Of a stretch of 64,000 nt of DNA, positions 18,331 through 64,000 are shown piece by piece. The DNA lies in the IMG/VR virus record IMGVR_UViG_3300047558_000137, positions 62,001 to 126,000 of that record; one strand, 5' to 3'. Every line of letters begins with the position of its first letter. The first letter of the stretch is position 1. The notes under the pieces are model-generated. The model was not told where the DNA came from and did not search any database. It worked only from the letters and a program-made list of their open reading frames with translations. The position numbers and the translations under genes are program-made.

Positions 18331-18333
18331 ATG

Positions 18334-20421: not shown

Positions 20422-20431
20422 ATATTTCCTT

Positions 20432-21177: not shown

Positions 21178-21184
21178 TGTGAAT

Positions 21185-21250
21185 CTCCTATAAGTTAATA
21201 TAGGCTTGCAGAATTTGTATAGCGGGATGAATGCCGAGAAAGGCCGCTGG
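21185..21250 (-). promoter_or_regulatory. Candidate preQ1-I-like riboswitch/structured leader of queD
   Basis: AGCGG...CAUC-CCGCU stem followed by AUACAAA; CCUAUA/UAUAGG hairpin overlaps the SD. Confidence 0.45.
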
Positions 21251-21259
21251 TTGAATTAG

Positions 21260-21265
21260 TATTTA
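21260..21265 (-). promoter_or_regulatory. T4-like late promoter box TAAATA
   Basis: GATAAATAC overlapping the PRTase stop, upstream of the queD leader. Confidence 0.5.
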
Positions 21266-22142: not shown

Positions 22143-22558
22143 CCTTTGTTGGTTAGGAATCCCCAGTCACGCCGCTGTGGGCCTGGCATAAACAAGGTCC
22201 AACAATCTACTGCGGGGTCAAGTTCAATGCGGTGGTAACTGTTTGCACCAGCCATTCTAAAGCTGCCTGGGCCACACCAGCGAGCAATTTCGCCAATCTT
22301 TTTTCCGTTGGCATCAAACTGTGGACGCCATTCCCAGTAGCCGCCTTTTAGGATAAGAGTGGCATAAGGCCAAGGGTGGTCATGCACATCATCGGGATCT
22401 GATTTGAGAAACTTGTGCAAAAACACATTAAACGGAAACCGTGTACGGTCTGTGAGAAAGAGGTAATATCTTTCAAGGTATGGTTCATCATTGATCCTAT
22501 CCATAACAATACGCTTGCGACCCATTCGTTCAAGCAGGTTGAGAAACTTAGTAAACAT
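22100..22558 (-). CDS. Cupin-fold protein
   Basis: LHKF..SD..D.HDHPW...LILKGGYWE...HRIEL...WTLF. Confidence 0.65.
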   Translation of the reverse strand: MFTKFLNLLERMGRKRIVMDRINDEPYLERYYLFLTDRTRFPFNVFLHKFLKSDPDDVHDHPWPYATLILKGGYWEWRPQFDANGKKIGEIARWCGPGSFRMAGANSYHRIELDPAVDCWTLFMPGPQRRDWGFLTNKGWVQHEEYLSARAK

Positions 22559-23760: not shown

Positions 23761-23766
23761 GCACCT

Positions 23767-23775
23767 ATTATAACA
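23767..23775 (-). promoter_or_regulatory. Extended -10 promoter for the lipoprotein gene
   Basis: TGTTATAAT (TGn-TATAAT) 6 nt upstream of the ATG at 23760. Confidence 0.5.
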
Positions 23776-23785
23776 TAGTTTCGAA

Positions 23786-24529
23786 TTAACGCGGAGCGAA
23801 CTCTTGCTGTAGCTTGATGTTATCAAAGAACTCTTTTTTAGTACTTTGATCCCGTTCAAATGCGCCTTTTAGTACTGTGGTCTGTGTGAGGCTACTGTGC
23901 GCCATAATACCACGATTCTCGCAGCATCCGTGGGTAGCTTGGATATATACCGCAACATCATTCGATCCAGTGGCAAACCCGATCTCACGAGCGATGTCCA
24001 TGCAAAGTTCTTCCTGAAGTGTTCCGCGGCGAGCACACCATTGTGCGATTCTAGTATACTTACTAAGTCCGATGAGCTTTGGCCCAGCAATAATTCCAAT
24101 ATAAGCCACGCCTGACACAGGCTGATGGTGATGGCTACACATGCTCTTAAGCTCACTACGCACAACCAACATGCCTTCGTATCGTCCTTCTGTGTCATTT
24201 GGGAAAGCCGTTGCGTTAGGTGTTGGTTCGTAGCGACCAGCCATGATTTCATTGTAGTACATTTTTGCAAGGCGTCTTGCTGTACCTTTACTGTTAGGAT
24301 CATTTTCTCTATCAATCAATAATGTGTCTAGTACACGTTCAAATGCTTCTGTAGCTTCGTCGATTAGTTGATCTTTCATTTTGTCGTCGATGTATTCGCT
24401 GACATTATCTCCTGCCCAGAATCTTTTGCCATCACGTTTAAATTTAAAGCGAAGGTGATCGCATACTTTGCCTAATCCATATCCGCCGTCTCCGGCCATT
24501 GCATCTAGTGCTGTTTCTTTATCTGTCAT
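23786..24529 (-). CDS. folE: GTP cyclohydrolase I
   Basis: GTARRLAKMY, SMCSHHHQP, IGLSKYTRI, RRGTLQEEL, HGCCENRG. Confidence 0.93.
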   Translation of the reverse strand: MTDKETALDAMAGDGGYGLGKVCDHLRFKFKRDGKRFWAGDNVSEYIDDKMKDQLIDEATEAFERVLDTLLIDRENDPNSKGTARRLAKMYYNEIMAGRYEPTPNATAFPNDTEGRYEGMLVVRSELKSMCSHHHQPVSGVAYIGIIAGPKLIGLSKYTRIAQWCARRGTLQEELCMDIAREIGFATGSNDVAVYIQATHGCCENRGIMAHSSLTQTTVLKGAFERDQSTKKEFFDNIKLQQEFAPR

Positions 24530-24530: not shown

Positions 24531-25130
24531 TTAATCCTTGATAGTGATTGTTCTTAAATCTGGGTACTGTACTAATACAGGGTCAACTGGAAACTCTTTA
24601 AGTTTTTCTAGTAAAGCAAGTCCTCGATCGGCTTCTTCAATAGTAGGCTTATAGTGATATCCAACTCTAAACTCTCGTTGTTCTACCCAGGGTGATGTAT
24701 TTAGGTCGCGGCCATCATAGCGCATTAAAATTATTGCATCATATGCAGCCTTGTCGTCTAACAGTATAGCACCTCCGCGGCCGATTTGTAAAGGCTTTCC
24801 TTGTCCAAAGCTGAGACATTGCATCGTTCCTGCTCGATACATATTCTTTTCTAAACGTCTAGCACTATCCCATATTCTAGTTAATCCAAAAGGATATTCT
24901 CCAATCCATTGTTTAGGCGAATGATTTTCATACATGTACTTAATTTCTAATTTATGCATAAGCATAGGGATACTCAGATAGGTAAACGGCGTCATAATAA
25001 CTTCCTGTACCTGCTCATAACGCATACACAACTCAATTGCGTGTGTACAACAGTCAGTCATGACGGCGTAAGGAGCACCTGTATACTCTGCTAGTGCTGT
25101 TTCAAATTGTTTAATTTTATCAAATGTCAT
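24531..25130 (-). CDS. Short DegT/DnrJ-like PLP-dependent aminotransferase
   Basis: FE..LAEY.G..YAV.TD.CT.AI.L, WDSA, LSFGQGKPL, GGAILLDD; only 199 aa. Confidence 0.7.
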   Translation of the reverse strand: MTFDKIKQFETALAEYTGAPYAVMTDCCTHAIELCMRYEQVQEVIMTPFTYLSIPMLMHKLEIKYMYENHSPKQWIGEYPFGLTRIWDSARRLEKNMYRAGTMQCLSFGQGKPLQIGRGGAILLDDKAAYDAIILMRYDGRDLNTSPWVEQREFRVGYHYKPTIEEADRGLALLEKLKEFPVDPVLVQYPDLRTITIKD

Positions 25131-26155
25131 AGATACATTGTCTCCATTGACTGAGGATTATCTAGAATATTTTGTATATTGATATTGTGTATGTTAGGCC
25201 TACATGGCTGGCAAAAAGCAACTCTAGTTTGATTATAAACTTCCATATGACGCTCACCCAACCATTCATCTCTAAAGTCACCCGAGTCCCACGACCCAAT
25301 TCTGAAATTAGGATTACCTTTATTTTCACAGCAGGTGTATATTCCACCATCTGCACAGAACACAGGAAAATGAAACATCTGATGACACTTCTTATAATTA
25401 CGTGTTAGATACTTGTTTAAGTTGATTTTATGTTCAACTTGATATCTCTTGCCTAGTTCATCTATCAGGGCCAGAGTCTTATTAGATATGTGGTATGCTA
25501 CATTGTTAACAATAGCCGGCCTAAAAAATACTGATCTGGCTCGTGTATCTCGGACTAACATAAAAATATCTGTTAGGGCCTGTTCGTTATCGTTGTAATC
25601 ATTAAGCAGTATTTTAAAATCAACATTTACACCAGCATCGATTAACCCACGTGCATTATTAATAACCTTGTTAAAGATACTTTTTTTAGGTATAGAACGT
25701 CGAATAGTTTCGTATAATTCTTCTGTTGCGGCATCTATATCAATACCTACCCAACCTAATTTGCGTAGCTTATCTACTGGTACTTTATTAAGTAATACAT
25801 CTAAGTTTGTGCCATTGGTTGTAATACTGGTTAGGAATCCTAGATCAATGGTATGTTCGATTACGTTTTCGTACCCTTTAAGCAAGGTGGGTTCCCCTCC
25901 GCCCGGGTAAGTGATAGTGTGTAAACTGCCATAGCTTCTGGGACTATGTGAACGCCAAGAAGCCAAACGATCTAGTAATTCTATATATTCACTGTATTGT
26001 TTTTGTACAGGCATTTCTTTTCTAAACTCTGCACTGTTACAATAGAAGCAATCTTGATTGCAGATATTAGTTAGGTCTATGTCGATTGATGCAGGCAATA
26101 TCTTCATGGTAGATGAATTGCCCATCCAGTGTACTACTTCAGCGTATTGATACAT
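25127..26155 (-). CDS. Radical SAM protein with SPASM/twitch-like C-terminus
   Basis: CNQDCFYC, GGGEPTL, TTNG; C-terminal C...ADGGIYTCC...CQPC. Confidence 0.85.
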   Translation of the reverse strand: MYQYAEVVHWMGNSSTMKILPASIDIDLTNICNQDCFYCNSAEFRKEMPVQKQYSEYIELLDRLASWRSHSPRSYGSLHTITYPGGGEPTLLKGYENVIEHTIDLGFLTSITTNGTNLDVLLNKVPVDKLRKLGWVGIDIDAATEELYETIRRSIPKKSIFNKVINNARGLIDAGVNVDFKILLNDYNDNEQALTDIFMLVRDTRARSVFFRPAIVNNVAYHISNKTLALIDELGKRYQVEHKINLNKYLTRNYKKCHQMFHFPVFCADGGIYTCCENKGNPNFRIGSWDSGDFRDEWLGERHMEVYNQTRVAFCQPCRPNIHNINIQNILDNPQSMETMYL

Positions 26156-50856: not shown

Positions 50857-51579
50857 TTATTTATGTGGCATTACAACCAGCTCATGACAATTTGATATCA
50901 AATCCGGGGACATTAAACGAACCATAGTATTAATACCTTCGTCGTTGCTGTAAAAATAGCAATTCCAAATATAAGAACTACCTTTTGACAGCATATCTAA
51001 TGTGCCTTTTGGAACATGGACTAGATCTGGCCCTAAATTAGAAAGATACAGATAAAGACTCTCTTTTACATGGGCAGAGAATGTGCCATCTTTAATGATA
51101 ACTTTATAACGATACCCGAGATCATTCTTTCGAATAATAGCGCCAGAGTTTAATATAGCTTCTGCTTCGTCATCTTCGGGCCCATATACAGACTCAACAT
51201 GGGTTTTATATGTGGGTATATATGTTTCAACAATATTACGCATATCATCGTCGGTTTGTGCATATACCTGTATGCGCGGTTCTTCGACTCGCATCTTTAT
51301 TCCGGGGATATTGGCCTGTTTGAGATTGCGTAGTTGTTCCAATAAAACAACATCGGCAGAATTTACATTAGACTGTCGAATATGGCGATACCACCAAGAT
51401 CCGCCAGGGTTGTAATTCTTACGGAATTCTATTTCTTGGGCGATATCGCCATTGCTTAAAATCAATCTACCAGCAGGAGCATACAATACCATTTTATATA
51501 GGTACTTGCCATAGTATTTTTTGGCTGTATGTCCTACTGTTATTTTAGGATTGGACTGAATCCAATACGATATATCCAT
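50857..51579 (-). CDS. Hypothetical protein
   Basis: 240-aa ORF overlapping the clpA stop. Confidence 0.7.
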   Translation of the reverse strand: MDISYWIQSNPKITVGHTAKKYYGKYLYKMVLYAPAGRLILSNGDIAQEIEFRKNYNPGGSWWYRHIRQSNVNSADVVLLEQLRNLKQANIPGIKMRVEEPRIQVYAQTDDDMRNIVETYIPTYKTHVESVYGPEDDEAEAILNSGAIIRKNDLGYRYKVIIKDGTFSAHVKESLYLYLSNLGPDLVHVPKGTLDMLSKGSSYIWNCYFYSNDEGINTMVRLMSPDLISNCHELVVMPHK

Positions 51580-53833
51580 TATTATCTACCATAGGAGTGC
51601 TCGGAGCATACGATCCCTGCGGAGTAAAGATGAATCCATCGTTAATGTAATCAACTTCAATCAATGTATATGCAGGAATGTTCTCGAACAATATCTTCTT
51701 ACTTAGCGGGACCTTAATAAGATCGCTAATTTTACGTGCAAGGGGTCGTGCGCCAAGTTTAGGATCATATCCTACCTTGCTCAATTGATCCACAGCCGCT
51801 TCAGTTAACCGAATCTTAACAGATTTCTCTGACAACAGTTCGTTAACTTCGTTAATAAATTTGCTAACAATCTTCTTGATGCTAATTTCATCAAGTTTGT
51901 TAAATTTACAGATGCCATCTAAACGGTTACGGAATTCAGGTTTAAAGAATTCTTTAACTGCTCGGTCATCTTCTCCAGTTTTTTGCAAATCACGGCCAAA
52001 GCCAATGTTATTGCGTTCATTATCTGCCGCACCTAAGTTACTTGTTAGAATAACAATAGCATTACGGGCATCGGCCTTTTTACCATTGGAACTAGTAATA
52101 GTGCCTTCATCCATAAGTGCCAGCATAATATTCATAATATCTGGATGTGCTTTTTCAACTTCATCAAGAAGAATAATACAGTTAGGATTCTTCTCAATAT
52201 CGCTAATAAGCAGGCCGCCGCCTAAGTTACCATCATCGAAGCCAACGTAACCGGGGGGAGCACCAATCAGTTTCGCAACTGAGTGCTTCTCTTGGTATTC
52301 ACTCATATCGTAGCGTAGTAGTTTCATCCCGAGATTCTCGGCTAGCAACTTTGCTAACTCAGTTTTACCTGTACCAGTGGGGCCCAGAAACAAGAAGTTA
52401 CCAATAGGTTTGTTCATTGCTTTTAGACCGGCACGAGCCACGTAAATCTTTTCCAGCACAGTACCAACAACTTGGTCCTGGCCATATAGTTTGTTCTTAA
52501 TATTTGATTCAAGATCAACAAGAGAGTTGGTATTATCACTGCCAATTTGGTCAACTGGAATCTTAGTAAACTTACTAATAATATCCACAATGTGACTCTT
52601 ACGGCAAGTCCAGCTAATAGCATTGATCTTTAGCTTTGCACAGGCTGTATCAACAAGATCAATAGCTTTGTCAGGCAACTTCTTGTCTGTTTGATAGCGT
52701 ACACTTAGATCAACTGCGGCATCTAATGCCTCATCGCTAATACTACCGCCATGAAATTCTTCAAAGTAACCACGTAGTCCACGCAAAATCTCTTTTGCTA
52801 CCTGTGGAGTAGGCTCTTCTACAGTCATACGATAGAAACGGCGCATCAACGCACGATCCTTTTCAAACGATTGGCTGTATTCTTCCCAAGTGGTTGATGC
52901 TACTACCTTAATATTGCCTTTAGTTAGTGCAGGCTTAATCATGTTAGCAAAGTCAACACTGCTATTGCTACCAGTGCCGGCGCCACGCATCTGATGTGCT
53001 TCATCAATAAACAAGATGCACTTGCCTTTGCTGTTTAACGCACCAATAACATCTTTAAACTTCTCTTCAAACTCGCCGCGGTACTTAGATCCAGCAAGCA
53101 AACTGCCAATGTCTAGGTTATAGACTGTATAGTCTTGTAGGTAATTAGGTACTGCACCATTAACAATGTTACGTGCCAGTCCTTCTGCAATAGCAGTCTT
53201 ACCAACTCCGGGGTCGCCTACTAACAATACGTTAGATTTGTTACGCTTAGCCAATACTTGTGCAATCTCATCAAGTTCGAACTCGCGACCAACAACTGGA
53301 TCAATTTGATTGTCCTTGGCTTTGGCGTTAAGGTTGTCGCAATATTCTTTAAGAATCTCTTCTGCGCGGGCACTGTTTGCATTGCCGCGGCGCTGTTTGC
53401 TCTCTACATAGTTCTTATTGTAGTAATCAACAAACTGTGTGCGTTCTAGACCGTACTTGATAAAAAAGTAACTGGCGTGACTATTTGTTTCGCTTGTGAT
53501 GCTTAGAAAAATGTCAATAACTTGTAAGTGACTGCGACCACTAAACAATACTTGTGTAAATGCACGGTTAAACACACGCTCTAGGCTGTGAGTTTTCTTA
53601 GCAACATGATCTGGATCTCGACTAACAATAGCAGTTTGTGCATCTAGGTAGTCTTCAATGTCTTTGATCATGGCATCTGCATCTGCCCCATATGCTACAG
53701 TTAGATCATAAAACGGCTTATAGGTCATAAGACCGTGTGTTAGATGCTCTAACGTCACGTATTCGTGATTGTATTTCTTTGCCAGATCAACTGCACTGGC
53801 AATAATAGTTTCAATTTCGGGGTTTTGATTCAT
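51545..53833 (-). CDS. clpA: ClpA-like two-AAA-domain unfoldase
   Basis: HEYVTLEHL N-domain, GDPGVGKT, FIDEAH, GPTGTGKT, LLDEVEKAH, IGF ClpP-docking loop, GARPL. Confidence 0.92.
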   Translation of the reverse strand: MNQNPEIETIIASAVDLAKKYNHEYVTLEHLTHGLMTYKPFYDLTVAYGADADAMIKDIEDYLDAQTAIVSRDPDHVAKKTHSLERVFNRAFTQVLFSGRSHLQVIDIFLSITSETNSHASYFFIKYGLERTQFVDYYNKNYVESKQRRGNANSARAEEILKEYCDNLNAKAKDNQIDPVVGREFELDEIAQVLAKRNKSNVLLVGDPGVGKTAIAEGLARNIVNGAVPNYLQDYTVYNLDIGSLLAGSKYRGEFEEKFKDVIGALNSKGKCILFIDEAHQMRGAGTGSNSSVDFANMIKPALTKGNIKVVASTTWEEYSQSFEKDRALMRRFYRMTVEEPTPQVAKEILRGLRGYFEEFHGGSISDEALDAAVDLSVRYQTDKKLPDKAIDLVDTACAKLKINAISWTCRKSHIVDIISKFTKIPVDQIGSDNTNSLVDLESNIKNKLYGQDQVVGTVLEKIYVARAGLKAMNKPIGNFLFLGPTGTGKTELAKLLAENLGMKLLRYDMSEYQEKHSVAKLIGAPPGYVGFDDGNLGGGLLISDIEKNPNCIILLDEVEKAHPDIMNIMLALMDEGTITSSNGKKADARNAIVILTSNLGAADNERNNIGFGRDLQKTGEDDRAVKEFFKPEFRNRLDGICKFNKLDEISIKKIVSKFINEVNELLSEKSVKIRLTEAAVDQLSKVGYDPKLGARPLARKISDLIKVPLSKKILFENIPAYTLIEVDYINDGFIFTPQGSYAPSTPMVDNNGYIVLDSVQS

Positions 53834-53842
53834 ATCAGATAT

Positions 53843-54685
53843 TTATTTTGGATTGATTAGTGAACGAACAGTTTCTAGTTGCTCGCTGTTAAGATCTTTT
53901 GGGACAAACAGATTTAGCTCTGCATACAAATTACCTCTAGTGTTGCTGTTAAGTTGATACAATCCTTGTCCGGGAATCCTGAATTTAATTCCAGGTTGTG
54001 TGCCGGGTGGTATTGTAATCTCAAATATTTTATCATCGATTGTGGTGATAGTTGTTGTGCCGCCAGCAATCGCTAATAAACAGTTCACGCTAATTTTACT
54101 ATATAAATCGATATCTTGCACGACAAAATTGTCCAATGGGGCAACCGAAATGTGTACATACAAGTCTCCACGTGGAATAGTGCTAAACAAATTGTCGCCC
54201 AAATTTGGATATTTTATCTGAGTGCCGTGATGTACGCCACGTGGTATCCGTACCTCAACAGTTTCTCGTTGTCCATTTGTTGTCTGTACACTGATTGTTG
54301 TATTTTGTTCACTTAATGTAGATGCCAATGATACCGGTATATTAACACGAAGGTCTTTGTTTCTTCGCATTTGTCTTTGAAAAGGACTTTGGCCTCCAAA
54401 GTTAAATCCAAAATTTTGGAATATTTGATCTAGGTCTGGGTGCGACCCAGGTCCATTCCATTGGAAATTAAATCCACTAGGCATGCCGCCACCGCGACGT
54501 TCTAAATCATACTGCTGTCGTCGATTTGGATCACTTAACGTGTCGTAGGCAGTTTGAATAGCTTGGAATCGAGCCGTGTCTCCGCCCTTGTCAGGATGAT
54601 GCTGACTTGCAAGTTTTCGGTATGCCTTTTTAATTTCATCTGGTGTAGCTGTTTCGCTTACACCCAATGTTTCGTAGTGAGTCAT
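53843..54685 (-). CDS. J-domain co-chaperone (class II, CbpA/DnaJ-like, no Zn finger)
   Basis: YETLGV, HHPDKGG (HPD), G/F-rich linker, GDLYV C-terminal domain. Confidence 0.9.
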
Positions 54686-55458
54686 AACACAGTGAATAAT
54701 TTTTCAGTTTCGGATAACGCCCGAAGTCTATATTGTAGCACAAATTCTCTTAATTCATCAGTTCCTAGTGCATTATACCAACCTGATGGTGGGCCAATAT
54801 GAAACTGACTATCTATATATGCCATTTCCCACAGCTGATAACTCCAGTGTCTAGGATTTGGTCCTTTTGTTCTAATATTGTCAATTGATTTCAAAAAGCT
54901 CAATCTAGCTTGATCAAACAATTGTCTATTGTCAACAAACTCTATTTGTTTATGAGTTAGCACCGAAACAATCTGTGAATAAAATAAATCAGGATTGGTA
55001 ATTAAATCCTCATAATACAAATTTACTGGATAAGTTTTGTTAAACTGTAATATAAATCTAGCTTGATAGAATAACCAATTAAAATCAGACTCATTGATAT
55101 CTGTAGTATTGGCCGGTGTATATGGATCTTTAATTAACCTAACACGCTGTCCGTTATCAACAATAACAGATTTTAACCCGCCCTGCTCACGCTTAATATT
55201 TTTTATAAAATAATTACACCATAGATTATATGGATAGCGACTAGATAAAATAAAATCTGGATCGGCTTCGGTATGATTTAACAGTAATGGAATTTTGCTT
55301 ACTGTACGATACTGTGGGTGCCAATTTTTCTTTTGTTCAACAAACAATTTGTTATTAATTAAACAATCAATTAAATGGAATAACCAATGCCCGCCGGCAC
55401 CCTGTGCAAATGCAATAGCAATTTGTTTCATTTGGTAGTATATTTTAAATGATACCAC
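54682..55458 (-). CDS. Hypothetical protein (possible sulfotransferase/P-loop-like fold; AT-rich)
   Basis: [12 protein letters not shown]-terminal loop; YYEDL motif. Confidence 0.45.
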
Positions 55459-55655
55459 ATGTAGTTTTGTTCAGTATCAAACACTGGAATAATCCTGATA
55501 GTATGCGGCTCTTCTTTAAACCGAATATCCATTAGACCAGGAATTCCAGCAGCTAATATTTCAGCCCTTACTTCACTCTGGAATTCAGCATCGGTCCAAT
55601 CGATAGCATAAGGCCCTTTGGATTCAATGATTTTAGAAATTGGATTAGTGGCCAT
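55428..55655 (-). CDS. Hypothetical protein
   Basis: 75-aa ORF downstream of a sigma70 promoter. Confidence 0.6.
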   Translation of the reverse strand: MATNPISKIIESKGPYAIDWTDAEFQSEVRAEILAAGIPGLMDIRFKEEPHTIRIIPVFDTEQNYMWYHLKYTTK

Positions 55656-55689
55656 AAAAAAGTCCTGTATGTTGATTATACAGGACTTT
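55656..55689 (-). terminator. Intrinsic terminator-like hairpin overlapping a promoter
   Basis: Perfect 12-bp inverted repeat AAAGTCCTGTAT-N7-ATACAGGACTTT followed by T-run on the minus strand. Confidence 0.6.
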
Positions 55690-55703
55690 GGGTTTTAAGT
55701 CAA
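55675..55703 (-). promoter_or_regulatory. Sigma70-type promoter
   Basis: TTGACT-N17-TATAAT. Confidence 0.75.
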
Positions 55704-55704
55704 A

Positions 55705-55905
55705 TTACTTCTTTTCGGGAACTTTTTCGCCTTCAACCTTTTTGTGAACTTTGATTTTCTTACAGGCTTGCTTTTCAGAACCGTCTTTGTTCTTTACAAC
55801 ATTGCCCTTTTTGTCTTTTACAGGTTCACAAACTTCTTTGGTTTGGCCGCCTGCGTATGCAGTACCAGCCAATGCCAACATAATGATTGCTAATAGTTGT
55901 TTCAT
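55705..55905 (-). CDS. Small secreted basic protein
   Basis: Signal peptide ending AYA; two Cys; Lys-rich. Confidence 0.65.
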   Translation of the reverse strand: MKQLLAIIMLALAGTAYAGGQTKEVCEPVKDKKGNVVKNKDGSEKQACKKIKVHKKVEGEKVPEKK

Positions 55906-55914
55906 TTTACTTCC

Positions 55915-56448
55915 TTATAGTAATGGTTGTTCAGCACCTGGTACAATTTTCTTACCACTTGCTGTTGTTGCGATTGGTGCACCAAATCCACCAAATGTTT
56001 GTGTTACGGTAGTCTGCACTGGTGCGCCAAATCCACTTGCTGGTTGTGCTGCTGGTGCACCAAATCCACCTGCTGCCGGTGCTGGTGTAGCACTAGACAA
56101 TTGTGGGCTAGGTAGACCTGCTGCATCTGGTACAGCGGATTGTCCTGCCAATTTCTCTTGTGTACGACCATAAGCTGACACACCTAATACAGCACACATA
56201 CTCACGTGGAATAGTCCACCGCCTTGTAGCGTAATAGGTACCCATTGACGGAACGCATCATTGGCTGCTTCCTGTTCCCAGAATTGGACTACAGTAAACA
56301 TGATTGGAAATACTGCAAAGTCACATAGACAGCAGGTCATGTACATAAATGCTGCACATGGGCGCCAGTATTTCTGCATCCACTCGCCTTTTGAATTAAT
56401 TTCTGTGACAACTGGTGCTGTTTCTTTTTCTTTTTTCTTTTTAAACAT
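55915..56448 (-). CDS. Putative holin (3TM-holin-like) with low-complexity tail
   Basis: WRP..AF.YM..C..DF..FP, W.PITLQGGGLFH..M.AVLGVSAYGRTQEK; lysis-cassette context. Confidence 0.6.
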   Translation of the reverse strand: MFKKKKEKETAPVVTEINSKGEWMQKYWRPCAAFMYMTCCLCDFAVFPIMFTVVQFWEQEAANDAFRQWVPITLQGGGLFHVSMCAVLGVSAYGRTQEKLAGQSAVPDAAGLPSPQLSSATPAPAAGGFGAPAAQPASGFGAPVQTTVTQTFGGFGAPIATTASGKKIVPGAEQPLL

Positions 56449-56471
56449 CTCTAGCTCCTTGAATTTTTATA

Positions 56472-57026
56472 TTAGAGTGGCATCCATAACCAGATACCCT
56501 GGCTTAGTAAGATAATGCCTATAACAGCAACAACTTCACTAATCTTATACATCTTGTTATTAACTGACAAGATACTTGCTGACAGCAACACAATAGCCAA
56601 TTGGAATGCCATGCTAGCAAATGTTAACCATGGACCATGTTTGGCTGCTTCGTCACGTGCTTTTTCAAATGCCTGTGCTTTTGCTAACAATTCTCGTTTA
56701 CCTTCGCCCTTTTCGGGTTCAGATTCGTAACGATCGATTTTCTTTTGTAGTGCTTCTGCTTTTACTTTATCACCGCGAGCAATGTAGTCATCACGTTGGC
56801 CTTCGGCAATAGTTTGTTTAATTGACTTTGACTGATAGAAAGCGTATGTATCAGTAGCCTTCAACATATTCTTTAAGCCAGCACCTGAGTGCATGTTTGC
56901 AAAGTAAGTAGTAATGGCCATGAACAAGGCCATGATAACAATAACTAGACCTGCTTTGTCTTTGATTTGTGCTTCACGTTCGCTGCGTGATAATGGTTTA
57001 ACTTCGGCTTTAACTTCTTCTGCCAT
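56472..57026 (-). CDS. DUF4337-like membrane protein
   Basis: N-terminal TM, YAFYQSKSIKQ, two C-terminal TMs with QLAIVL.S.SIL. Confidence 0.6.
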   Translation of the reverse strand: MAEEVKAEVKPLSRSEREAQIKDKAGLVIVIMALFMAITTYFANMHSGAGLKNMLKATDTYAFYQSKSIKQTIAEGQRDDYIARGDKVKAEALQKKIDRYESEPEKGEGKRELLAKAQAFEKARDEAAKHGPWLTFASMAFQLAIVLLSASILSVNNKMYKISEVVAVIGIILLSQGIWLWMPL

Positions 57027-57281
57027 TTATTTTACTCCTTCGAATATTCTTTTTTGTATTTCGTACCATTCATTCCATTTATCAATTTTAACTGCACATT
57101 CATAGTATGTAGCATAGTTAATATTAACAGTGGAACTAACGTCACTTAACTTTGCACCTTCGGCTAGTTTTTGTAACTGTGGGCAAGTCTGTGCGTTTTT
57201 AGGTGCTTCAGGAAACTTTGCTGTTACTGGAACAACAGTTGAACATCCAGATAACAATAATGCCGCTAATAGATATCTCAT
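57027..57281 (-). CDS. Outer-membrane spanin (Rz1-like lipoprotein)
   Basis: LSGC lipobox, Pro-rich, Cys; follows the i-spanin. Confidence 0.7.
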   Translation of the reverse strand: MRYLLAALLLSGCSTVVPVTAKFPEAPKNAQTCPQLQKLAEGAKLSDVSSTVNINYATYYECAVKIDKWNEWYEIQKRIFEGVK

Positions 57282-57742
57282 TTTGGTTGCTCCGCCGACA
57301 TGTTATGTGCATCAATGAATGCTTTAGGGATAACACATTGATTGTTGTATTTTGCAACTTCGCGATCGATATATTGCTTAACAATAACTTCGCGGCCCTT
57401 TATTACTTTGACCTTCTCTGCTGACTTCTTATCTAATGCTAGATTAGCAGCCTTAGATTCCTCTTCGGCCTTGGCAACTTTGGCTTCCATTTCTGCAACA
57501 CGCTCACGCCATTGCATCTCTGTAGCATACCCACCTTCGAAGTATATACCGGCAGCTAAAAGAGCTGCACTAGCAACCTGTGCTAGTGTTACATATTTCG
57601 ATAATGGCGGGAACCAACGTAGTAGTCGATTGACAACAAAGAAGAATAGTACACAACCAACAATCCCGGCCAATAGGATAGTGTGTACAATAAATTGTAT
57701 AAAACTATCTGGTAGGAAATGTAGCAACCACATGTTATGCAC
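57278..57742 (-). CDS. Inner-membrane spanin (Rz-like)
   Basis: N-terminal TM helices, coiled coil, C-terminal C.IP motif; follows the endolysin. Confidence 0.7.
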   Translation of the reverse strand: MHNMWLLHFLPDSFIQFIVHTILLAGIVGCVLFFFVVNRLLRWFPPLSKYVTLAQVASAALLAAGIYFEGGYATEMQWRERVAEMEAKVAKAEEESKAANLALDKKSAEKVKVIKGREVIVKQYIDREVAKYNNQCVIPKAFIDAHNMSAEQPK

Positions 57743-58364
57743 CTAGTACGTGGCAGGCGTGGTTGTAGTGTTTAATACGATCTTCTAATCCAATGGTACC
57801 GCCGTTAATGCGCTTAGTTAGATTTAGAATGTCGCCTTTGTCTGCGTATTGGTTTAAGTTGTTAGCTTCCCAGAACCAAGCGGCACTTTGTACACAACCT
57901 TCAAAAGTTGTTAAGTGTTCGCTAGCTTCTTCTACACTAATTTCTAAACTTTGTGCGTAACGACTGTAGTTGTCCTTACCAGTTAACTGGATAAGTCCAC
58001 GTCCGCAATACTTATATCCATCGCCTGACTCTTCTGGACCGTTGCCCATACGGTTAGCATAGATTCTATTAGCAATAGCCTCTTGCTTGTTAAGCTTTGC
58101 ACAGTATTCTTCTGCTAGTGCATCCGTTGGGAAATACTTACCGAACAACTTACGTAGTGTTGGCGGGCGATAGTTTAAATTCTCTTTAATGGCTTTAAAA
58201 CCACCAGATTCGTGGGCACACTGTGCTAAAAATGCTGCTACACGCTGTGGTGTATCAATATCATAATCTGGTAATATTTCACACAGGGCTTCATGCCAGT
58301 GATCAATATATGGGTTTCCGGGAACGATTTGTTTTAATTGGTCTAATGATAGTTCGAAACTCAT
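57735..58364 (-). CDS. GH19 endolysin
   Basis: FLAQCAHESGGF..ENLNY, YCGRGLIQLTGKDNY, SAAWFW, TKRINGG.IGL.DR; late box at 58388-58393 and AGGAG SD. Confidence 0.9.
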   Translation of the reverse strand: MSFELSLDQLKQIVPGNPYIDHWHEALCEILPDYDIDTPQRVAAFLAQCAHESGGFKAIKENLNYRPPTLRKLFGKYFPTDALAEEYCAKLNKQEAIANRIYANRMGNGPEESGDGYKYCGRGLIQLTGKDNYSRYAQSLEISVEEASEHLTTFEGCVQSAAWFWEANNLNQYADKGDILNLTKRINGGTIGLEDRIKHYNHACHVLGA

Positions 58365-59508: not shown

Positions 59509-60768
59509 TTAAATAGCGTGTGTTGCTATTTTCTTTAATTTTCTGTTCTGTATAGCCATAATTTCCATGTTAGAACGTTCTAAGTATCCTCTATTTACAA
59601 ATTTAGGAGATACAGGATTATACGTGCTGTCTCCTATGTAATATAGTTGACTTAAATTTGGTTTAAACCCCACGGGGCTGTTTAATTCATATTGGAAATA
59701 CTTTGGATCGATTTTATCTACTAGAAATTTTAGCCCTGCACGCCATGCATGATCGTACTCGGTCCCTGCTAAATTAGTATGAAACCAGTGATCCATTTCA
59801 TTGTAGAAACTAGTTGTTGGCTTTGATGTTTGCCATGTTTCTAAATCATAATCTGGGTATATTATTGATTTAGCGATATATTCGTATGCTGTGCGCTGGT
59901 TTGTATTACCATTGGGTGTCTGCACCAAATGCCTGACATGTCCGTTCTGGGACATATCAAACCACATCTTAATCATGTGTGCTTGCTTACACACTATTTC
60001 TGGCAAATCTGGAGTCCAATAAAATAACTCTGTGGTTATATTGGTATTATCTCCAACTACAGGATTGGGATGATTTGCCTGTAGGTCACTATAATAGACA
60101 TACCATTTGTTTTCTATAATACAGACTTTGGGTTTATCAATACCATATAACGCACAGATCTTCTTTCCAGAATCAGCTAGGGTTTGATGTGCAGTAGTTC
60201 CAAAGTTAGTGTGCTTAATTCCATGACCGGGTTGAAACCAGTCCCGAGTAGTGTAGACCCACGACTCATCTCTCATATATGAATCGTTTAGAAGATTTTC
60301 ACTGTAGTCTTGAACTGTAACTACTGTATCGGGAAAGTTTGTCTTGATCCAGTGCAGTAGTGGTTCAGCGGCAAATTTCTTCTCACTTAGTGTATTTTCT
60401 GCGTTAGTGTTCCATGGATCGTCTGTTACATCCTTGTCTACTTGTGCGGGATATCTAAATACAACTTCGTCTAAGTGAATTCCGTTTAGTAAGAAAGCAA
60501 AAATAGCAGTAGTACTGTCTCCACCGCCACTAGCTTCAACTCTAATCCAATCATACTGATCTCGTAACTGCTGTGCCCTGATTCGATACAACTCTCGTAT
60601 ACTGACTTCGGGTTCTTGTGTCCAATTAAATTTAGCCAAGTCGATTGTATTAAAGTGCCACCCAGGTGTTACGCCTAATTCTGTGGCACGTATGTAAGCC
60701 TGAGGCTTTGAATAGAAAACCTCAGTGCCTACTGTGTAATAACCTAATTTAGGATTACGTTCAATCAT
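59509..60768 (-). CDS. PP-loop (adenine nucleotide alpha hydrolase-like) enzyme A
   Basis: IRVEASGGGDST (SGGxDS). Confidence 0.65.
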   Translation of the reverse strand: MIERNPKLGYYTVGTEVFYSKPQAYIRATELGVTPGWHFNTIDLAKFNWTQEPEVSIRELYRIRAQQLRDQYDWIRVEASGGGDSTTAIFAFLLNGIHLDEVVFRYPAQVDKDVTDDPWNTNAENTLSEKKFAAEPLLHWIKTNFPDTVVTVQDYSENLLNDSYMRDESWVYTTRDWFQPGHGIKHTNFGTTAHQTLADSGKKICALYGIDKPKVCIIENKWYVYYSDLQANHPNPVVGDNTNITTELFYWTPDLPEIVCKQAHMIKMWFDMSQNGHVRHLVQTPNGNTNQRTAYEYIAKSIIYPDYDLETWQTSKPTTSFYNEMDHWFHTNLAGTEYDHAWRAGLKFLVDKIDPKYFQYELNSPVGFKPNLSQLYYIGDSTYNPVSPKFVNRGYLERSNMEIMAIQNRKLKKIATHAI

Positions 60769-61685
60769 TTTGATTGATCGATTTTAACACCAACTGTTAA
60801 GTTAGTCCAATATTTAGATTGCTCATCCCACCATTTTACTAAATCCTTTTCTGGGATTTGGTAAGGTTGGCAATAGTCAAGTGCATAAGAATCTCTAACA
60901 GATTTTTTACCTTCTACTTTAAGTAGAATATCTCTGATTTCTTTTGCTTTGTCTTCTGGGAATGTTTTTGGTACCATTAGGTTATAAGGAGTATTCATCT
61001 TGCCCATTGCTGTAGGAAAGCCTTGGCTTACTAATGTTGCGTACTTTCCTACAGGTTTAGTGCCGGTGATCCCTAGAATATTCAGCTTAGGCTTACCTGG
61101 TTCAGCAACAACATATTTTTCTGCATCACCAATAAATCCCACTGCTAGATCAACTTGGCCGCCGAGAGCAGCAATAAATGCATCTATTGTAGATTTAAAC
61201 GGAATAATGGTTGCATTTGGGTATGCTCGAACTACCTCAATGGCCATCAGATGACTAACTACACCAAGTCCACTAGTCGCAATGGTAATAGGTTGATCCT
61301 TTGGAACTTCCTTCCATGATGAGTACTTAGAACTTGCTACAGAAAATGGAACACTACATTGTGTGATTAATGTACGGAAATCGTTTGGATCGTAGCTTTC
61401 TTTAGGATAGAAAGCAGGACGCACCCAGAATACACCCGACGTCATAAAAATACTGCCGGGCGTATTTTTAACATAGTTACCTGCAATAGCATTGCCGGCC
61501 CCGGGCTTTGCATCAAAGATAAAGTTATACTTGTCTTGAATTTTATTTGCTTCTTCAGCCAGGTTACGACTGTAGTTTGCACTGTTATCTGCGGCGCTGA
61601 AGCCATAGATGATTTGAATAGTTTCTTTTGCAGATGCAGATAATGCTACTGCCGCAAAAACCAACGCGGTTAAAAGTTTTTTCAT
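60765..61685 (-). CDS. Bug/TctC tripartite tricarboxylate transporter-type substrate-binding protein
   Basis: Signal peptide MKKLL...ASA; KPGAGNAIA, SGLGVVSHL, PFKS..DA..A.LGGQVD; start at 61685 after GGAG. Confidence 0.75.
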   Translation of the reverse strand: MKKLLTALVFAAVALSASAKETIQIIYGFSAADNSANYSRNLAEEANKIQDKYNFIFDAKPGAGNAIAGNYVKNTPGSIFMTSGVFWVRPAFYPKESYDPNDFRTLITQCSVPFSVASSKYSSWKEVPKDQPITIATSGLGVVSHLMAIEVVRAYPNATIIPFKSTIDAFIAALGGQVDLAVGFIGDAEKYVVAEPGKPKLNILGITGTKPVGKYATLVSQGFPTAMGKMNTPYNLMVPKTFPEDKAKEIRDILLKVEGKKSVRDSYALDYCQPYQIPEKDLVKWWDEQSKYWTNLTVGVKIDQSK

Positions 61686-61867
61686 GTTTATTTTCTCCAA
61701 TAAAAATTATACAAAATTATTACTAATTTGTCTATGATTAAAGGCTAGTAGGATTTCTACTTACGGAAGTCGGCGTTCTATGTGTATCACAACAGTAAAA
61801 GAGTTTTACTACTCTTGGCGTCAACTATATGTCCGGCGTCAGATATCTGGCGCTGCAAAATTATTTA

Positions 61868-62851
61868 TTATAATTTGTATTGTAACAAAGTTTCTTTAGC
61901 AAATAATTCTTCTACAGTAAGTAAATGTTTAGACAAGCCTTGTGTGTGGTGGTAACGGCAAAATGTTTCTAACATAGTTAAATTATTTTTAATTCCATAA
62001 CTCCACCAATTGTTGCCAAACTCTCGACGAGTTTCTTCTATGTGTGCAGGCAACCACGGTAACATTATTTTTAATGCATCGGTTTCCTGTAAATCTGTAT
62101 AAGCATACTCTTGAGCCTGTACAAACGCATTAAGTAAATTTTGAGCAAGCCATCTATGTTGTTCATATATCGATCTACGTATAACAATAACATGCATAGC
62201 AGGAAATATATTAGTTAGCCGATAGTAATCTTTTTCTACGTTTGCAAAATCAGGAAACAATCTTATAACTTTCCCGTCACCTTTTAAAAAACTAGTTGGC
62301 GTTCTGGCAGCATATAGTGCATCAATTTCGCCAGTATACAACATATTAGACAATGTTTTATTTGAGTCAATTGGGCTCACAAAATCTAAATCAAGTGGTA
62401 CACGTTCTATTCTGCCGGGCTGCTCTTGCCCGCCGGTGTAATGTTTTTGCGTAGTTTGATCTACACCATAGTATTCTTGCAAAATGCCACGGATCCATAC
62501 AGGTGCAGTCATTTGATATTCAGGGCTCGCTACACGTTTACCATTTAAATCACTCGGTGTTTTAATTCCTGACTCAGCATTAACGTAGATACAACTATGT
62601 CTAAAGAATCTAGATGGAAACACTGGAATAGCAACAAATGGTCTTTCTTCAGTATGTAAAGACATGCAGTAACTAGATAAAGACATTTCTGCTACGTCAA
62701 AATCTTGATATCGTGCCATTCTGAAGAATGTTTCATCTACAGGTAAATTGCTGTAATACAATTCTGCGCCCTCAACAGACACACACCCGTCAATTAACGC
62801 GGCAATGCGATCATAGTTCCAACAGGCAAAACTTAAATTTAATTTTTTCAT
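61868..62851 (-). CDS. 4,5-dihydroxyphthalate decarboxylase-like protein (type 2 periplasmic-binding fold, no signal peptide)
   Basis: YDRIAALIDG, FDVAEMSLSSY, IPVFPSRFFRHS, YQMTAPVWIRGIL, IFP.MH.IVIRR. Confidence 0.8.
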   Translation of the reverse strand: MKKLNLSFACWNYDRIAALIDGCVSVEGAELYYSNLPVDETFFRMARYQDFDVAEMSLSSYCMSLHTEERPFVAIPVFPSRFFRHSCIYVNAESGIKTPSDLNGKRVASPEYQMTAPVWIRGILQEYYGVDQTTQKHYTGGQEQPGRIERVPLDLDFVSPIDSNKTLSNMLYTGEIDALYAARTPTSFLKGDGKVIRLFPDFANVEKDYYRLTNIFPAMHVIVIRRSIYEQHRWLAQNLLNAFVQAQEYAYTDLQETDALKIMLPWLPAHIEETRREFGNNWWSYGIKNNLTMLETFCRYHHTQGLSKHLLTVEELFAKETLLQYKL

Positions 62852-64000
62852 TAAAATCTATTACCTAAGGTAATATTAAATTTTTGTCTAGTATTATCAA
62901 ACATTACAGCATCACCAATATAGTAGAACGGAGTTAAGAACCCAACAAAGCCTACCGCACGGCCAAATTCAATATTAAAGTATTTTCGATCAATATTACG
63001 TTCAACAAAATTAATGCCAGCCATCCAACTATTGTATAGTTTATGTCCTTGAAAGTTATTGTAAAACCAAAAGTCCATTTCGCTATAAAAGTTAGTACCA
63101 GGTTTAGATACTTGAAACGTCATTGGATCGTAGTCAGGATAGACCAATGGCTTAACCATTTGTTCGTATGCTGTTCGCTGAGCGTTACTATGATTAGGCC
63201 AACGCACTAGGTATTGTAAATGCTGATTAGCTGGCATACTAAACCAATTGCGTACTAGGTGTGCTTGCTTTACACTGATCTCAGGCAAGTCCGGAGACCA
63301 GAAGAAGTATTCGTTTGTAATATTAGTATACTCACCTATGTCTGGATTGGCATAGTTAGCCTGGAAGTCGATAAAATACAAATACCACTTGTCGTCACGT
63401 ATACACATCTTAGGTTTGTCAATGCCGTATAACACACAGATCTTTTTACCCGAGTCTGCTAATATGCGTTGGTCAATTGTGTGGTAGTTAGGAAACTTAG
63501 TAACGTGTGCTGGTTGTAGGAAGTCTTTGGCTGCATAAACCCACGACTCATCACGGTCTTCATTTTCTAACATGTCTTCGCTGTAGTCGTGGACTGTAAC
63601 TTTAACCTTAGGGTAATGTACCTGCACCCATTGTAACAACGGTTTAGTTGCTAACTCAGCTTCACTTAGAGTATTTTCAACTTTATAGTTACCGGCATCA
63701 ACGGGTATAGTTTCGCCTCCGGCCTTTGGATAACGAAATACAACTTCGTCGATATGAATACCATTAAGTAGAAAACAAAATAGGGTTTGTGCGCTATCAC
63801 TGCCACCTGAACATTCTAGTCGAATATAATCGTAACGATCCCGTAACTGCTGTGCCCTGATGCGATATAATTCTTTGAGATTTACTTCAGGCTCGTGTGT
63901 CCAATTTTGGGCACCATATACTTCGTTATTAAAATTCCAGTTTGGAAATTGATCTGTGCGAGTGCCTTCTATTAGGGCCTGCACCTTACTGTAATATCGT
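62851..64000 (-). CDS. PP-loop enzyme B (5'-truncated by the window edge), paralogue of 59509..60768
   Basis: IRLECSGGSDS; frame stays open to the window end (RYYSKVQA aligns with FYSKPQA of the paralogue). Confidence 0.7.
   Translation of the reverse strand, partial: RYYSKVQALIEGTRTDQFPNWNFNNEVYGAQNWTHEPEVNLKELYRIRAQQLRDRYDYIRLECSGGSDSAQTLFCFLLNGIHIDEVVFRYPKAGGETIPVDAGNYKVENTLSEAELATKPLLQWVQVHYPKVKVTVHDYSEDMLENEDRDESWVYAAKDFLQPAHVTKFPNYHTIDQRILADSGKKICVLYGIDKPKMCIRDDKWYLYFIDFQANYANPDIGEYTNITNEYFFWSPDLPEISVKQAHLVRNWFSMPANQHLQYLVRWPNHSNAQRTAYEQMVKPLVYPDYDPMTFQVSKPGTNFYSEMDFWFYNNFQGHKLYNSWMAGINFVERNIDRKYFNIEFGRAVGFVGFLTPFYYIGDAVMFDNTRQKFNITLGNRF

What the first reader, a model, noticed from the sequence alone, without database searches (positions are those of the whole stretch)
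59509..64000. Paired PP-loop enzymes and solute-binding-fold proteins
Seen: the transcription order is PP-loop B > dihydroxyphthalate-decarboxylase-like PBP (no signal peptide), then late box and leader > secreted Bug/TctC receptor > PP-loop A. Each enzyme is translationally coupled to a binding-fold protein. The two PP-loop proteins are clear paralogues (SGGxDS, GID KPK, FFW.PDLPEI..KQAH, YPDYD) of about 400 aa and lack QueC's C-terminal Cys zinc site. No transporter membrane components are present. Established: PP-loop enzymes adenylate carboxylates or nucleobases (QueC, asparagine synthetase, TilS, ThiI). Inference: an uncharacterised sense-and-modify module for a small carboxylate or aromatic ligand. 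One paralogue might instead amidate CDG in place of QueC.
Basis: partly seen in the sequence, partly recalled or inferred. Interest (0 to 1): 0.7.

Follow-up and report, generated by a model that had tools for sequence, protein, structure and literature searches.

The report
Phage PP-loop enzymes linked to solute receptors
A 374-kb freshwater jumbo phage carries four copies of a phage-only, unnamed ATP-using enzyme family, each beside a secreted carboxylate receptor of the TctC type, a pairing also seen in many related uncultured phages and best read as a cassette that imports an organic acid and chemically activates it.

Summary
All four genes lie on the minus strand at the stated coordinates. 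The order is PP-loop B, a signal-less homologue of 4,5-dihydroxyphthalate decarboxylase, a 167-nt gap, secreted TctC, then PP-loop A.

The two enzymes are 53% identical. They match no Pfam, NCBIfam or PDB sequence. A confident model (pLDDT 92.5) has a PP-loop fold closest to the asparagine synthetase B synthetase domain (Z 11.1). The family has at least 1,809 clusters at 50% identity and is almost entirely viral. It has no conserved cysteine.

- The genome holds exactly four PP-loop and four TctC genes, each TctC just upstream of a PP-loop gene.
- In 76 related viral loci, 70 of 100 PP-loop genes have a solute-binding-protein gene as immediate neighbour.
- Divergent members sit beside TctC or TctA.

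Three points do not hold:
- The "late box" is really a sigma-70-like promoter.
- Start/stop overlaps are common throughout this genome.
- The decarboxylase-like gene is host-derived island cargo, probably from a Limnohabitans-like host, not a fixed partner of PP-loop B.

Best reading: the receptors use host TTT transporters, and the ligases adenylate and amidate the imported carboxylate. The substrate is unknown. A QueC substitute is unlikely but not excluded.

The parts
59509..60768 (-). PP-loop A (P0001, 419 aa). It belongs to a phage-specific family with no Pfam model, in the adenine nucleotide alpha hydrolase superfamily. SGGGDS is at residues 80-85. The fold is closest to the AsnB synthetase domain. 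There is a short N-terminal remnant domain (about 56 aa) and a C-terminal helix specific to the A type.
   Evidence: no family match; large family; model pLDDT 92.5; fold matches; conserved residues, no cysteine
60765..61685 (-). Secreted TctC/Bug-type solute receptor (tcA type). It is 306 aa from the ATG at 61685, which follows a GGAG; the longest ORF starts at a TTG at 61700. Signal peptide MKKLLTALVFAAVALSASA/KE. The first carboxylate-clamp loop is divergent (SAADNS instead of PGGxxD). Its stop overlaps the PP-loop A start (ATGA).
61706..61734 (-). Sigma-70-like promoter TAGACA-N17-TATAAT (11 of 12 matches), about 20 nt upstream of the TctC start.
61686..61867 (-). Intergenic region between the decarboxylase-like gene and TctC. 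It has no Rfam match and no unusually stable fold. It holds a weak hairpin followed by a U-rich run.
61868..62851 (-). Cytoplasmic PBP-fold protein homologous to 4,5-dihydroxyphthalate decarboxylase (P0003, 327 aa, no signal peptide). It is host-derived cargo that sits where relatives carry a signal-less DctP-like gene.
62851..64000 (-). PP-loop B. It is cut by the window end; the full 406 aa run to genome position 126071 (L002:1447-2667:-). It has an SGGSDS motif and is 53% identical to A. This is the commonest type in relatives. Its stop overlaps the start of the decarboxylase-like gene (TAATG).

Best explanation
The window shows one end of an accessory island in a 374-kb freshwater jumbo phage, whose host is probably a Limnohabitans-like betaproteobacterium. 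The island is built from repeated units of a secreted orphan TctC (TTT-family) carboxylate receptor and a cytoplasmic enzyme.

In most units the enzyme belongs to a large, phage-restricted PP-loop family with no Pfam model. Its fold is closest to the synthetase domain of asparagine synthetase B, beta-lactam synthetase and carbapenam synthetase.

Proposed mechanism:
1. The phage receptors are exported to the periplasm from a sigma-70-type promoter.
2. They bind a carboxylate and dock on the host's own TctA/TctB membrane subunits, because the phage has none.
3. In the cytoplasm the PP-loop enzyme uses ATP to adenylate the carboxylate (acyl-AMP + PPi). It then passes the acyl group to ammonia or an amine, forming an amide that commits or traps the solute.

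The signal-less PBP-fold proteins are alternative or additional cytoplasmic handlers of the same class of ligands. These are DctP-like in most relatives and the dihydroxyphthalate-decarboxylase homologue here.

Shown: the gene content, the fold, the signal peptides, the absence of membrane subunits and the conserved linkage. Inferred: the chemistry, the use of host TctAB and the identity of the substrate.
For: **Fold**
- The model has pLDDT 92.5. It shows a strand, then SGGGDS, then a helix (residues 74-93), which is the PP-loop arrangement.
- VIA-align gives AsnB Z 11.1 over 284 residues, human ASNS 10.6, beta-lactam synthetase 9.5 and TsnB9 9.1. Foldseek's top PDB hits are carbapenam and beta-lactam synthetase.
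- S80-G-G-x-D84-S85 and a set of acidic and basic residues are conserved across 67 diverse members. No cysteine is conserved, which excludes the sulfur-transfer, Fe-S, PAPS-reductase and QueC-zinc types and leaves the amide-forming N-type enzymes.

**Linkage**
- The genome has exactly 4 PP-loop and 4 TctC genes. Three pairs are adjacent or overlapping, one of them 55 kb from the island; the fourth pair is separated by one ORF. Random placement reaches this closeness in 1 of 200,000 trials.
- In 76 viral loci, 70 of 100 PP-loop genes have an SBP gene as immediate same-strand neighbour, and 90 of 100 have one within 3 kb.
- Distant members (28-40% identity) lie beside TctC or TctA.

**Localisation**
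- All TctC copies have signal peptides (4 of 4 here, 70 of 70 in relatives). All DctP-like copies lack them (2 of 2 here, 46 of 46 in relatives).
- The phage has no TctA or DctM.

**Interchangeable enzyme slot**
- In relative L098 the orthologous tcA-type TctC is followed by the decarboxylase homologue instead of PP-loop A.
- In Limnohabitans the same decarboxylase sits directly after a TctC in a Rieske-dioxygenase operon. So the unit of a TctC followed by an enzyme for the imported acid is also the host's own arrangement.
Against: - No sequence-level homology to any characterised enzyme. Pfam, NCBIfam and PDB searches are empty. hhalign against E. coli AsnB aligns only the SGGxDS motif, at 1.6% probability. 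The chemistry therefore rests on fold rank and the absence of cysteines.
- No substrate is identified.
- Some PP-loop genes occur in runs without SBPs (L025, L026). One divergent member sits among NAD-salvage genes with no SBP nearby.
- The related loci share ancestry, so the counts are not independent events.
- Use of host TctAB by phage receptors is untested.
- tcA-type and tcC-type TctC have lost the canonical first carboxylate-binding loop.
- There are no expression data: no RNA runs hold the sequence.
Confidence: 0.45

Rival explanations
1. Co-location without coupling. The region is a hypervariable accessory island where auxiliary genes accumulate and duplicate. The solute receptors boost nutrient uptake on their own. 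The PP-loop enzymes act on an endogenous substrate (a cofactor, a nucleotide, or a peptide or protein carboxylate) unrelated to what the receptors bind.
For: - Island content and order vary widely between relatives.
- PP-loop genes occur in tandem runs without SBPs (L025, L026, L081).
- L098 keeps the TctC genes but has no PP-loop gene in the island.
- P0270 lies among NAMPT and NMNAT-like genes without an SBP.
- Start/stop overlaps are generic in this genome.
Against: - Pair D is an isolated TctC-then-PP-loop unit 55 kb from the island.
- Members at only 28-40% identity, on unrelated contigs, still neighbour TctC or TctA.
- The counts match exactly, 4 and 4, in this genome.
Confidence: 0.25
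2. One or more paralogues replace QueC. They would amidate 7-carboxy-7-deazaguanine made by the phage's FolE/QueD/QueE genes, giving ADG or preQ0.
For: - The phage has FolE, QueD and a QueE-like radical-SAM protein (window 17473-24529).
- It has no Pfam QueC.
- Four relatives all have QueD but no clear QueC.
- CDG is a carboxylate.
- The nearest language-model clusters include viral proteins with weak QueC labels.
Against: - QueC ranks low structurally (Z 6.7 against 11.1 for AsnB).
- The Pfam QueC model does not match.
- There is no zinc-binding cysteine cluster.
- The proteins are 376-419 aa, against about 220 aa for QueC.
- There are four paralogues, all beside secreted transport receptors and 35 kb or more from the que genes.
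- No TGT/DpdA was detected that could use the product.
- G004 has a separate weak QueC-like ORF near its QueD.
Confidence: 0.07
3. The proteins modify nucleic-acid bases, in the manner of TilS, GuaA or ThiI. They would adenylate a base on tRNA or phage DNA and attach an imported amino acid or amine.
For: TilS scores Z 9.3. MnmA, TtcA and TtuA recur in the Foldseek lists. Jumbo phages often hypermodify their nucleic acids (general knowledge).
Against: - These matches cover only the core of about 160 residues, while AsnB-type matches cover 270-284 residues.
- No cysteine is available for thiolation.
- No RNA- or DNA-binding domain was detected.
Confidence: 0.08
4. The proteins regulate transport rather than catalyse a reaction. 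They would bind ATP like TeaD, the universal-stress protein of the TeaABC TRAP transporter, and tune the host's TTT or TRAP transporters.
For: USP-family proteins, including TeaD, appear among the fold matches (Z 6.2-7.3). The proteins are genetically linked to transporter components.
Against: The SGGxDS PP-loop and many polar residues are strictly conserved across the family, as expected for catalysis. USPs lack that motif. The proteins are three times the size of USPs.
Confidence: 0.04

Closest known systems
Asparagine synthetase B synthetase domain and its glutaminase-less relatives (beta-lactam synthetase, carbapenam synthetase, TsnB9)
   Same: PP-loop SGGxDS after the first strand. These are the best and longest structural matches (Z 9.1-11.1 over 268-284 aligned residues). 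As in beta-lactam and carbapenam synthetase, the N-terminal domain is vestigial. No catalytic cysteine is needed for amide formation.
   Different: There is no detectable sequence homology (PF00733 not matched; hhalign probability 1.6%). Only about 56 N-terminal residues remain and there is no glutaminase domain. The family is almost exclusively viral, and its genes sit beside transport receptors.
TctC/Bug solute receptors of tripartite tricarboxylate transporters (BugD, BugE, Bug27, AdpC, TphC/TBP)
   Same: Pfam TctC match, cleavable signal peptide, about 300 aa, and PDB matches to Bug proteins. They are "orphan" receptors encoded without TctAB, beside an enzyme gene, as is typical in Burkholderiales.
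   Different: They are phage-encoded, in a metagenome-only subfamily of 429 clusters. The tcA and tcC types have lost the canonical PGGxxD loop. Their ligand is unknown.
4,5-dihydroxyphthalate decarboxylase (PDB 9jp7; pht/oph pathway)
   Same: Full-length match, E=9.8e-73. The protein has a cytoplasmic PBP fold. It is 62-64% identical to Limnohabitans genes that lie in Rieske dioxygenase/reductase/dehydrogenase/TctC operons.
   Different: The phage has none of the upstream dioxygenase or dehydrogenase genes nearby, so the protein's substrate in an infected cell is unclear.
Phage auxiliary uptake genes such as cyanophage PstS (phosphate-binding protein)
   Same: The phage supplies only the periplasmic receptor and relies on the host's membrane transporter (general knowledge).
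   Different: The transporter class differs (TTT/TRAP secondary transporters for carboxylates, not an ABC transporter). There are multiple paralogues, each tied to a dedicated cytoplasmic enzyme, plus SBP-fold proteins that have lost their signal peptides.
QueC (7-cyano-7-deazaguanine synthase)
   Same: PP-loop motif and carboxylate-adenylating chemistry. The phage makes the QueC substrate precursor (it has FolE, QueD and QueE).
   Different: PF06508 is not matched, there is no zinc-cysteine cluster, the proteins are nearly twice as long, and the fold rank is low (Z 6.7).

Membership tests
PP-loop ATP pyrophosphatase / adenine nucleotide alpha hydrolase superfamily | SGGxDS (PP-loop) motif between the first beta-strand and the first helix of the nucleotide-binding fold | tested here: met
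   SGGGDS (A) and SGGSDS (B). S80, G81, G82, D84 and S85 are 96-100% conserved in 67 diverse members. The model has a strand at 74-79 and a helix at 83-93.
PP-loop ATP pyrophosphatase / adenine nucleotide alpha hydrolase superfamily | Rossmann-like alpha/beta/alpha fold that superposes on known PP-loop enzymes | tested here: met
   The top 20 or so VIA-align hits are all PP-loop/AANH enzymes (AsnB, TilS, GuaA, CysD, LarE, NadE, PAPS reductase), with Z 7.5-11.1. Foldseek PDB, AFDB and atlas searches agree.
PP-loop ATP pyrophosphatase / adenine nucleotide alpha hydrolase superfamily | ATP -> AMP + PPi turnover | not testable with these tools
   Needs an enzyme assay.
Asparagine synthase (Pfam PF00733, class II glutamine amidotransferase type) | Significant match to the family HMM | tested here: not met
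   No hit at E<=1 for A or B. None in 67 members at E<=0.01. None in the genome. hhalign against E. coli AsnB gives 1.6% probability.
Asparagine synthase (Pfam PF00733, class II glutamine amidotransferase type) | N-terminal Ntn glutaminase domain with a catalytic N-terminal cysteine | tested here: not met
   Only about 56 residues precede the PP-loop domain, and no cysteine is conserved.
Asparagine synthase (Pfam PF00733, class II glutamine amidotransferase type) | Synthetase-domain architecture (PP-loop core plus the helical C-terminal subdomain) | tested here: met
   AsnB 1ct9 gives Z 11.1 with 284 residues aligned (model 6-370 against AsnB 141-516). Human ASNS gives Z 10.6.
QueC (PF06508) | HMM match and a C-terminal zinc-binding cysteine cluster | tested here: not met
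   No PF06508 hit. No alignment column has cysteine in 20% or more of sequences. QueC gives Z 6.7.
TctC/Bug receptor (PF03401), for P0002 | HMM match above the gathering score, and a Sec signal peptide | tested here: met
   28.1 bits against a cut-off of 27. PDB hits AdpC 2e-9 and BugD 8e-8. Relatives are precomputed as PF03401. Signal peptide MKKLLTALVFAAVALSASA.
TctC/Bug receptor (PF03401), for P0002 | Cognate TctA/TctB membrane subunits encoded by the same genome | tested here: not met
   PF01970 is absent from the 374-kb genome. Host subunits would be required. Some distant phage relatives do carry TctA.
4,5-dihydroxyphthalate decarboxylase, for P0003 | Full-length homology to the solved or characterised enzyme | tested here: met
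   9jp7_A, E=9.8e-73, residues 1-325 against 21-347.
4,5-dihydroxyphthalate decarboxylase, for P0003 | Pathway context (phthalate dioxygenase, reductase, cis-diol dehydrogenase) | tested here: not met
   The context is present around the bacterial homologues. It is absent around the phage gene.
T4-type late promoter ("late box") | TATAAATA upstream of the gene, and use of that motif across the genome | tested here: not met
   There are 13 copies on both strands of the genome and none in 61686-61867. A sigma-70-like site is present instead.

The most novel reading that the evidence does not exclude
A clade of freshwater jumbo phages encodes a self-contained system to capture, import and trap organic acids. 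Secreted orphan TctC receptors plug into the host's TTT permease. Binding proteins that have lost their signal peptides (DctP-like) hold the ligand in the cytoplasm. A phage-only family of AsnB-like ligases amidates the ligand. The paralogue sets give each phage a different palette of organic acids. This would be a new class of phage auxiliary metabolic module and the first function for a PP-loop family of about 1,800 clusters.
Probability: 0.3. Interest if true: 0.75.

Novelty: new variant of a known kind. Interest (0 to 1): 0.6.

Why it matters
- Phage-encoded receptors for TTT or TRAP carboxylate transporters turned up neither in my literature searches nor in more than two unannotated "Bacteriophage sp." records from faecal samples among 50,697 GenBank phage records (TctC). 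The PP-loop family has no match there at all.
- Yet the PP-loop family is large (at least 1,809 clusters at 50% identity), almost purely viral and unnamed.
- If the link is functional, abundant freshwater phages reprogramme how their hosts take up and commit dissolved organic acids. That bears on carbon flow in lakes.
- It would also give a testable function to a big piece of viral dark matter.
- The signal-less DctP-like proteins would be a rare case of a transport receptor fold re-used in the cytoplasm.

Tried and rejected
- **Sequence searches on the PP-loop proteins.** Pfam, PHROGs and NCBIfam gave nothing useful. PDB sequence and profile searches gave only chance-level hits. Longer family members carry no extra Pfam domain, so there are no informative fusions.
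- **Phage database.** megablast and tblastn against 50,697 GenBank phage records found no match for the region or for paralogues A, C and D.
- **Related-locus search.** The search for related loci with the 67-sequence alignment failed because it had no conserved stretch. It worked with the 9-sequence alignment.
- **hhalign against E. coli AsnB** aligned only the PP-loop motif.
- **Complex prediction of PP-loop B with the decarboxylase-like protein** gave no answer (score 0.00, controls not run). This is not evidence either way.
- **Swiss-Prot fold search** gave only weak, generic PP-loop hits.
- **Late-promoter motif search and k-mer enrichment** did not support a late box here.
- **Leader and riboswitch.** RNA folding and Rfam gave nothing for the gap.
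- **NAD-salvage idea.** It was prompted by P0270's neighbours and by the Bug27/Bug69 quinolinate paper. The genome has no NAPRTase/NAMPT, so I did not pursue it.
- **Transcript evidence.** Only DNA metagenome runs hold the sequence, so I did not use read laying.

Full report
**What is there.** The window is bases 62001-126000 of a 374,314-bp virus record rated complete. The same DNA occurs in freshwater metagenomes.
- PP-loop B runs from 62851 and ends 71 nt outside the window. It is 406 aa in the genome.
- A 327-aa PBP-fold protein without a signal peptide lies at 61868-62851.
- A 167-nt gap follows.
- A TctC receptor with a signal peptide lies at 60765-61685/61700.
- PP-loop A lies at 59509-60768 (419 aa).

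The stop/start overlaps TAATG and ATGA are real. They are also ordinary here: 100 of 409 same-strand neighbour pairs overlap by 1 or 4 nt.

The gap holds no TATAAATA late box. That motif occurs only 13 times in the genome. The gap does hold the best sigma-70-like site in the region, TAGACA-17-TATAAT. It has no Rfam match and no unusual RNA fold.

**The enzymes.**
- Pfam, NCBIfam, PHROGs and PDB sequence or profile searches do not recognise them.
- The family is large. It has 839 clusters at 90% identity within reach of the word search and 1,809 representatives at 50% identity.
- Structure-atlas clusters of the family are 99-100% viral.
- A scan of 185,579 species' genomes found only two MAG contigs. 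No GenBank phage record matches.
- An AlphaFold model built on 67 diverse members is confident (pLDDT 92.5, pTM 0.88). It places SGGGDS between strand 74-79 and helix 83-93, as in PP-loop enzymes.
- An exhaustive structural comparison ranks E. coli AsnB first (Z 11.1, 284 residues). Human ASNS (10.6), beta-lactam synthetase (9.5), TilS (9.3) and TsnB9 (9.1) follow. QueC reaches only 6.7. Foldseek agrees, with weak scores.
- hhalign against E. coli AsnB aligns only the PP-loop motif. The relationship is therefore at the level of fold and motif, not of family membership.
- No cysteine is conserved anywhere in the family. That rules out the QueC zinc site, Fe-S or persulfide thiolases, LarE-type and PAPS-reductase-type chemistry. 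It leaves the amide-forming N-type ATP pyrophosphatases as the best mechanistic analogy.

**The pairing.**
- The genome contains exactly four members of the PP-loop family and exactly four TctC genes.
- Every TctC has a signal peptide and lies upstream of a PP-loop gene on the same strand.
- Pairs A, C and D are adjacent or overlapping. Pair D is 55 kb from the island.
- The fourth TctC is separated from PP-loop B by one 206-aa ORF.
- Random placement of eight genes among 486 reaches this closeness in 1 of 200,000 trials.
- The phage has no TctA and no DctM.
- In 76 related viral loci, 70 of 100 PP-loop genes with adequate flanks have a TctC or DctP-like gene as immediate same-strand neighbour. 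Ninety have one within 3 kb.
- The commonest order is B-type PP-loop, then a DctP-like gene, then a tcA-type TctC, then an A-type PP-loop. UFOVP112 shows the same order.
- These loci are related, so the counts are not independent events.
- Much more distant members behave alike. P0125 is flanked by two TctC genes. P0200 is followed by TctA. P0221 lies in a cluster of three PP-loop genes, TctA and a secreted 283-aa protein. Both MAG contigs have SBP neighbours.
- One distant member (P0270) has no SBP neighbour and sits among NAD-salvage genes.

**The binding-fold proteins.**
- P0002 just passes the Pfam TctC cut-off. It matches AdpC, BugD, Bug27 and terephthalate-binding proteins.
- Its subfamily of 429 clusters is known only from metagenomes.
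- It keeps the second clamp motif (SGLGVVSHL) but not the first PGGxxD loop. This is read from the sequence against my own knowledge of Bug proteins.
- The DctP-like proteins of this phage clade all lack signal peptides: 2 of 2 here and 46 of 46 in relatives by a crude test. In the PDB alignments they begin about 20 residues into the solved chains, which is consistent with loss of the signal peptide. They are therefore cytoplasmic.
- P0003 matches the solved 4,5-dihydroxyphthalate decarboxylase over its full length (E=9.8e-73).
- Its nearest named relatives, at 62-64% identity, are from Limnohabitans and other Burkholderiaceae. There the gene follows a TctC in an operon with a Rieske oxygenase, its reductase and a dehydrogenase. 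This points to a Limnohabitans-like host and to recent capture of the gene.
- None of the 79 related loci carries the gene.
- In another relative (L098) it sits directly after the orthologous tcA-type TctC, in the place of PP-loop A. That island has no PP-loop gene at all.
- So the neighbourhood of PP-loop B and the decarboxylase-like gene in this window is island mosaicism, not a conserved pair. The repeated element is a secreted TctC followed by a cytoplasmic enzyme, and the enzyme slot is interchangeable.

**Interpretation.**
- All components recognise or act on carboxylates (established knowledge of the families). TctC/Bug and DctP receptors bind them. The decarboxylase acts on an aromatic dicarboxylate. 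AsnB-type enzymes adenylate carboxylates.
- In Burkholderiales, orphan Bug receptors encoded beside the enzyme for the imported acid are the norm. The Limnohabitans operon is an example.
- The most economical model has three steps. The phage exports extra receptors that use host TctAB. The PP-loop enzymes then activate and amidate the imported acid. The signal-less PBP-fold proteins handle the ligand in the cytoplasm.
- Other carbon-metabolism genes in the window fit a phage that remodels organic-acid metabolism, for example isocitrate lyase at 19213-20499. They do not prove it.
- The substrate, the acyl acceptor and the use of host permeases are all inferred.

**Rivals.**
- Plain co-location in a variable island is the strongest rival (0.25).
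- The QueC-substitute idea stays open only because the phage and four relatives carry QueD (this phage also FolE and QueE) but no clear QueC or TGT. Fold rank, size, lack of a zinc site, paralogue number and genomic context all argue against it.
- A TilS-like base-modifying role and a TeaD-like regulatory role are less likely.
- A complex prediction for PP-loop B with P0003 returned no answer. It is not evidence either way.

**Verdict.** The functional reading is partly supported: "modify a carboxylate" is plausible, "sense" is not indicated, and the B pair is incidental. The proteins form a new, phage-specific branch of a known superfamily in a gene arrangement my literature searches did not find.

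Noticed in passing
window 17473-24529 (QueE-like 17473-18330, QueD 20623-21177, FolE 23786-24529): The phage has genes to make 7-carboxy-7-deazaguanine. The whole genome has no Pfam-detectable QueC or TGT/DpdA. Four related jumbo phages also have QueD without a clear QueC. What uses the CDG is unknown.
   Followed up: partly
window 19213-20499: A phage-encoded isocitrate lyase (Pfam ICL, E=1e-102). UFOVP112 has one too. This is a glyoxylate-shunt auxiliary gene.
   Followed up: no
L005:6218-7177 (genome 132218-133177) and genome 295887-296843: Two DctP-family (TRAP receptor) homologues lack signal peptides. All 46 full-length DctP-like genes in related phage loci also lack them. A cytoplasmic TRAP-receptor fold is unusual.
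   Followed up: partly
L096:385-7627 (a divergent phage-like contig): A cluster of a short (302-aa) PP-loop protein, a 584-aa and a 395-aa member of the family, a TctA permease subunit and a secreted 283-aa protein. So some phages carry the membrane subunit too.
   Followed up: partly
window 51545-58364: Just downstream of the island lie a lysis-like set (GH19 at 57735-58364, DUF4337 at 56472-57026, a holin-like ORF at 55915-56448) and the chaperones DnaJ (53843-54685) and ClpB (51545-53833). This order is syntenic with UFOVP112 and L098.
   Followed up: no
L005:5523-6218 and L005:195-815: A rubrerythrin/ferritin-like di-iron protein lies between the DctP-like gene and TctC-C. A 206-aa ORF with a faint sulfotransferase match lies between the fourth TctC and PP-loop B. 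The 206-aa ORF's position is conserved in relatives (205-206 aa ORFs in L007 and L098).
   Followed up: no
window 22558-23859 and 25127-26155: An FG-GAP repeat protein and a 342-aa radical-SAM protein lie near the FolE/QueD genes. Radical-SAM genes also lie near divergent PP-loop family members (the P0125 and P0270 contexts).
   Followed up: no
genome-wide (G000): The 8-mers TAAATAC[AT] are enriched 15-18-fold in upstream intergenic regions (8-10 regions). This may be a phage promoter element distinct from the sigma-70-like site upstream of TctC-A.
   Followed up: no
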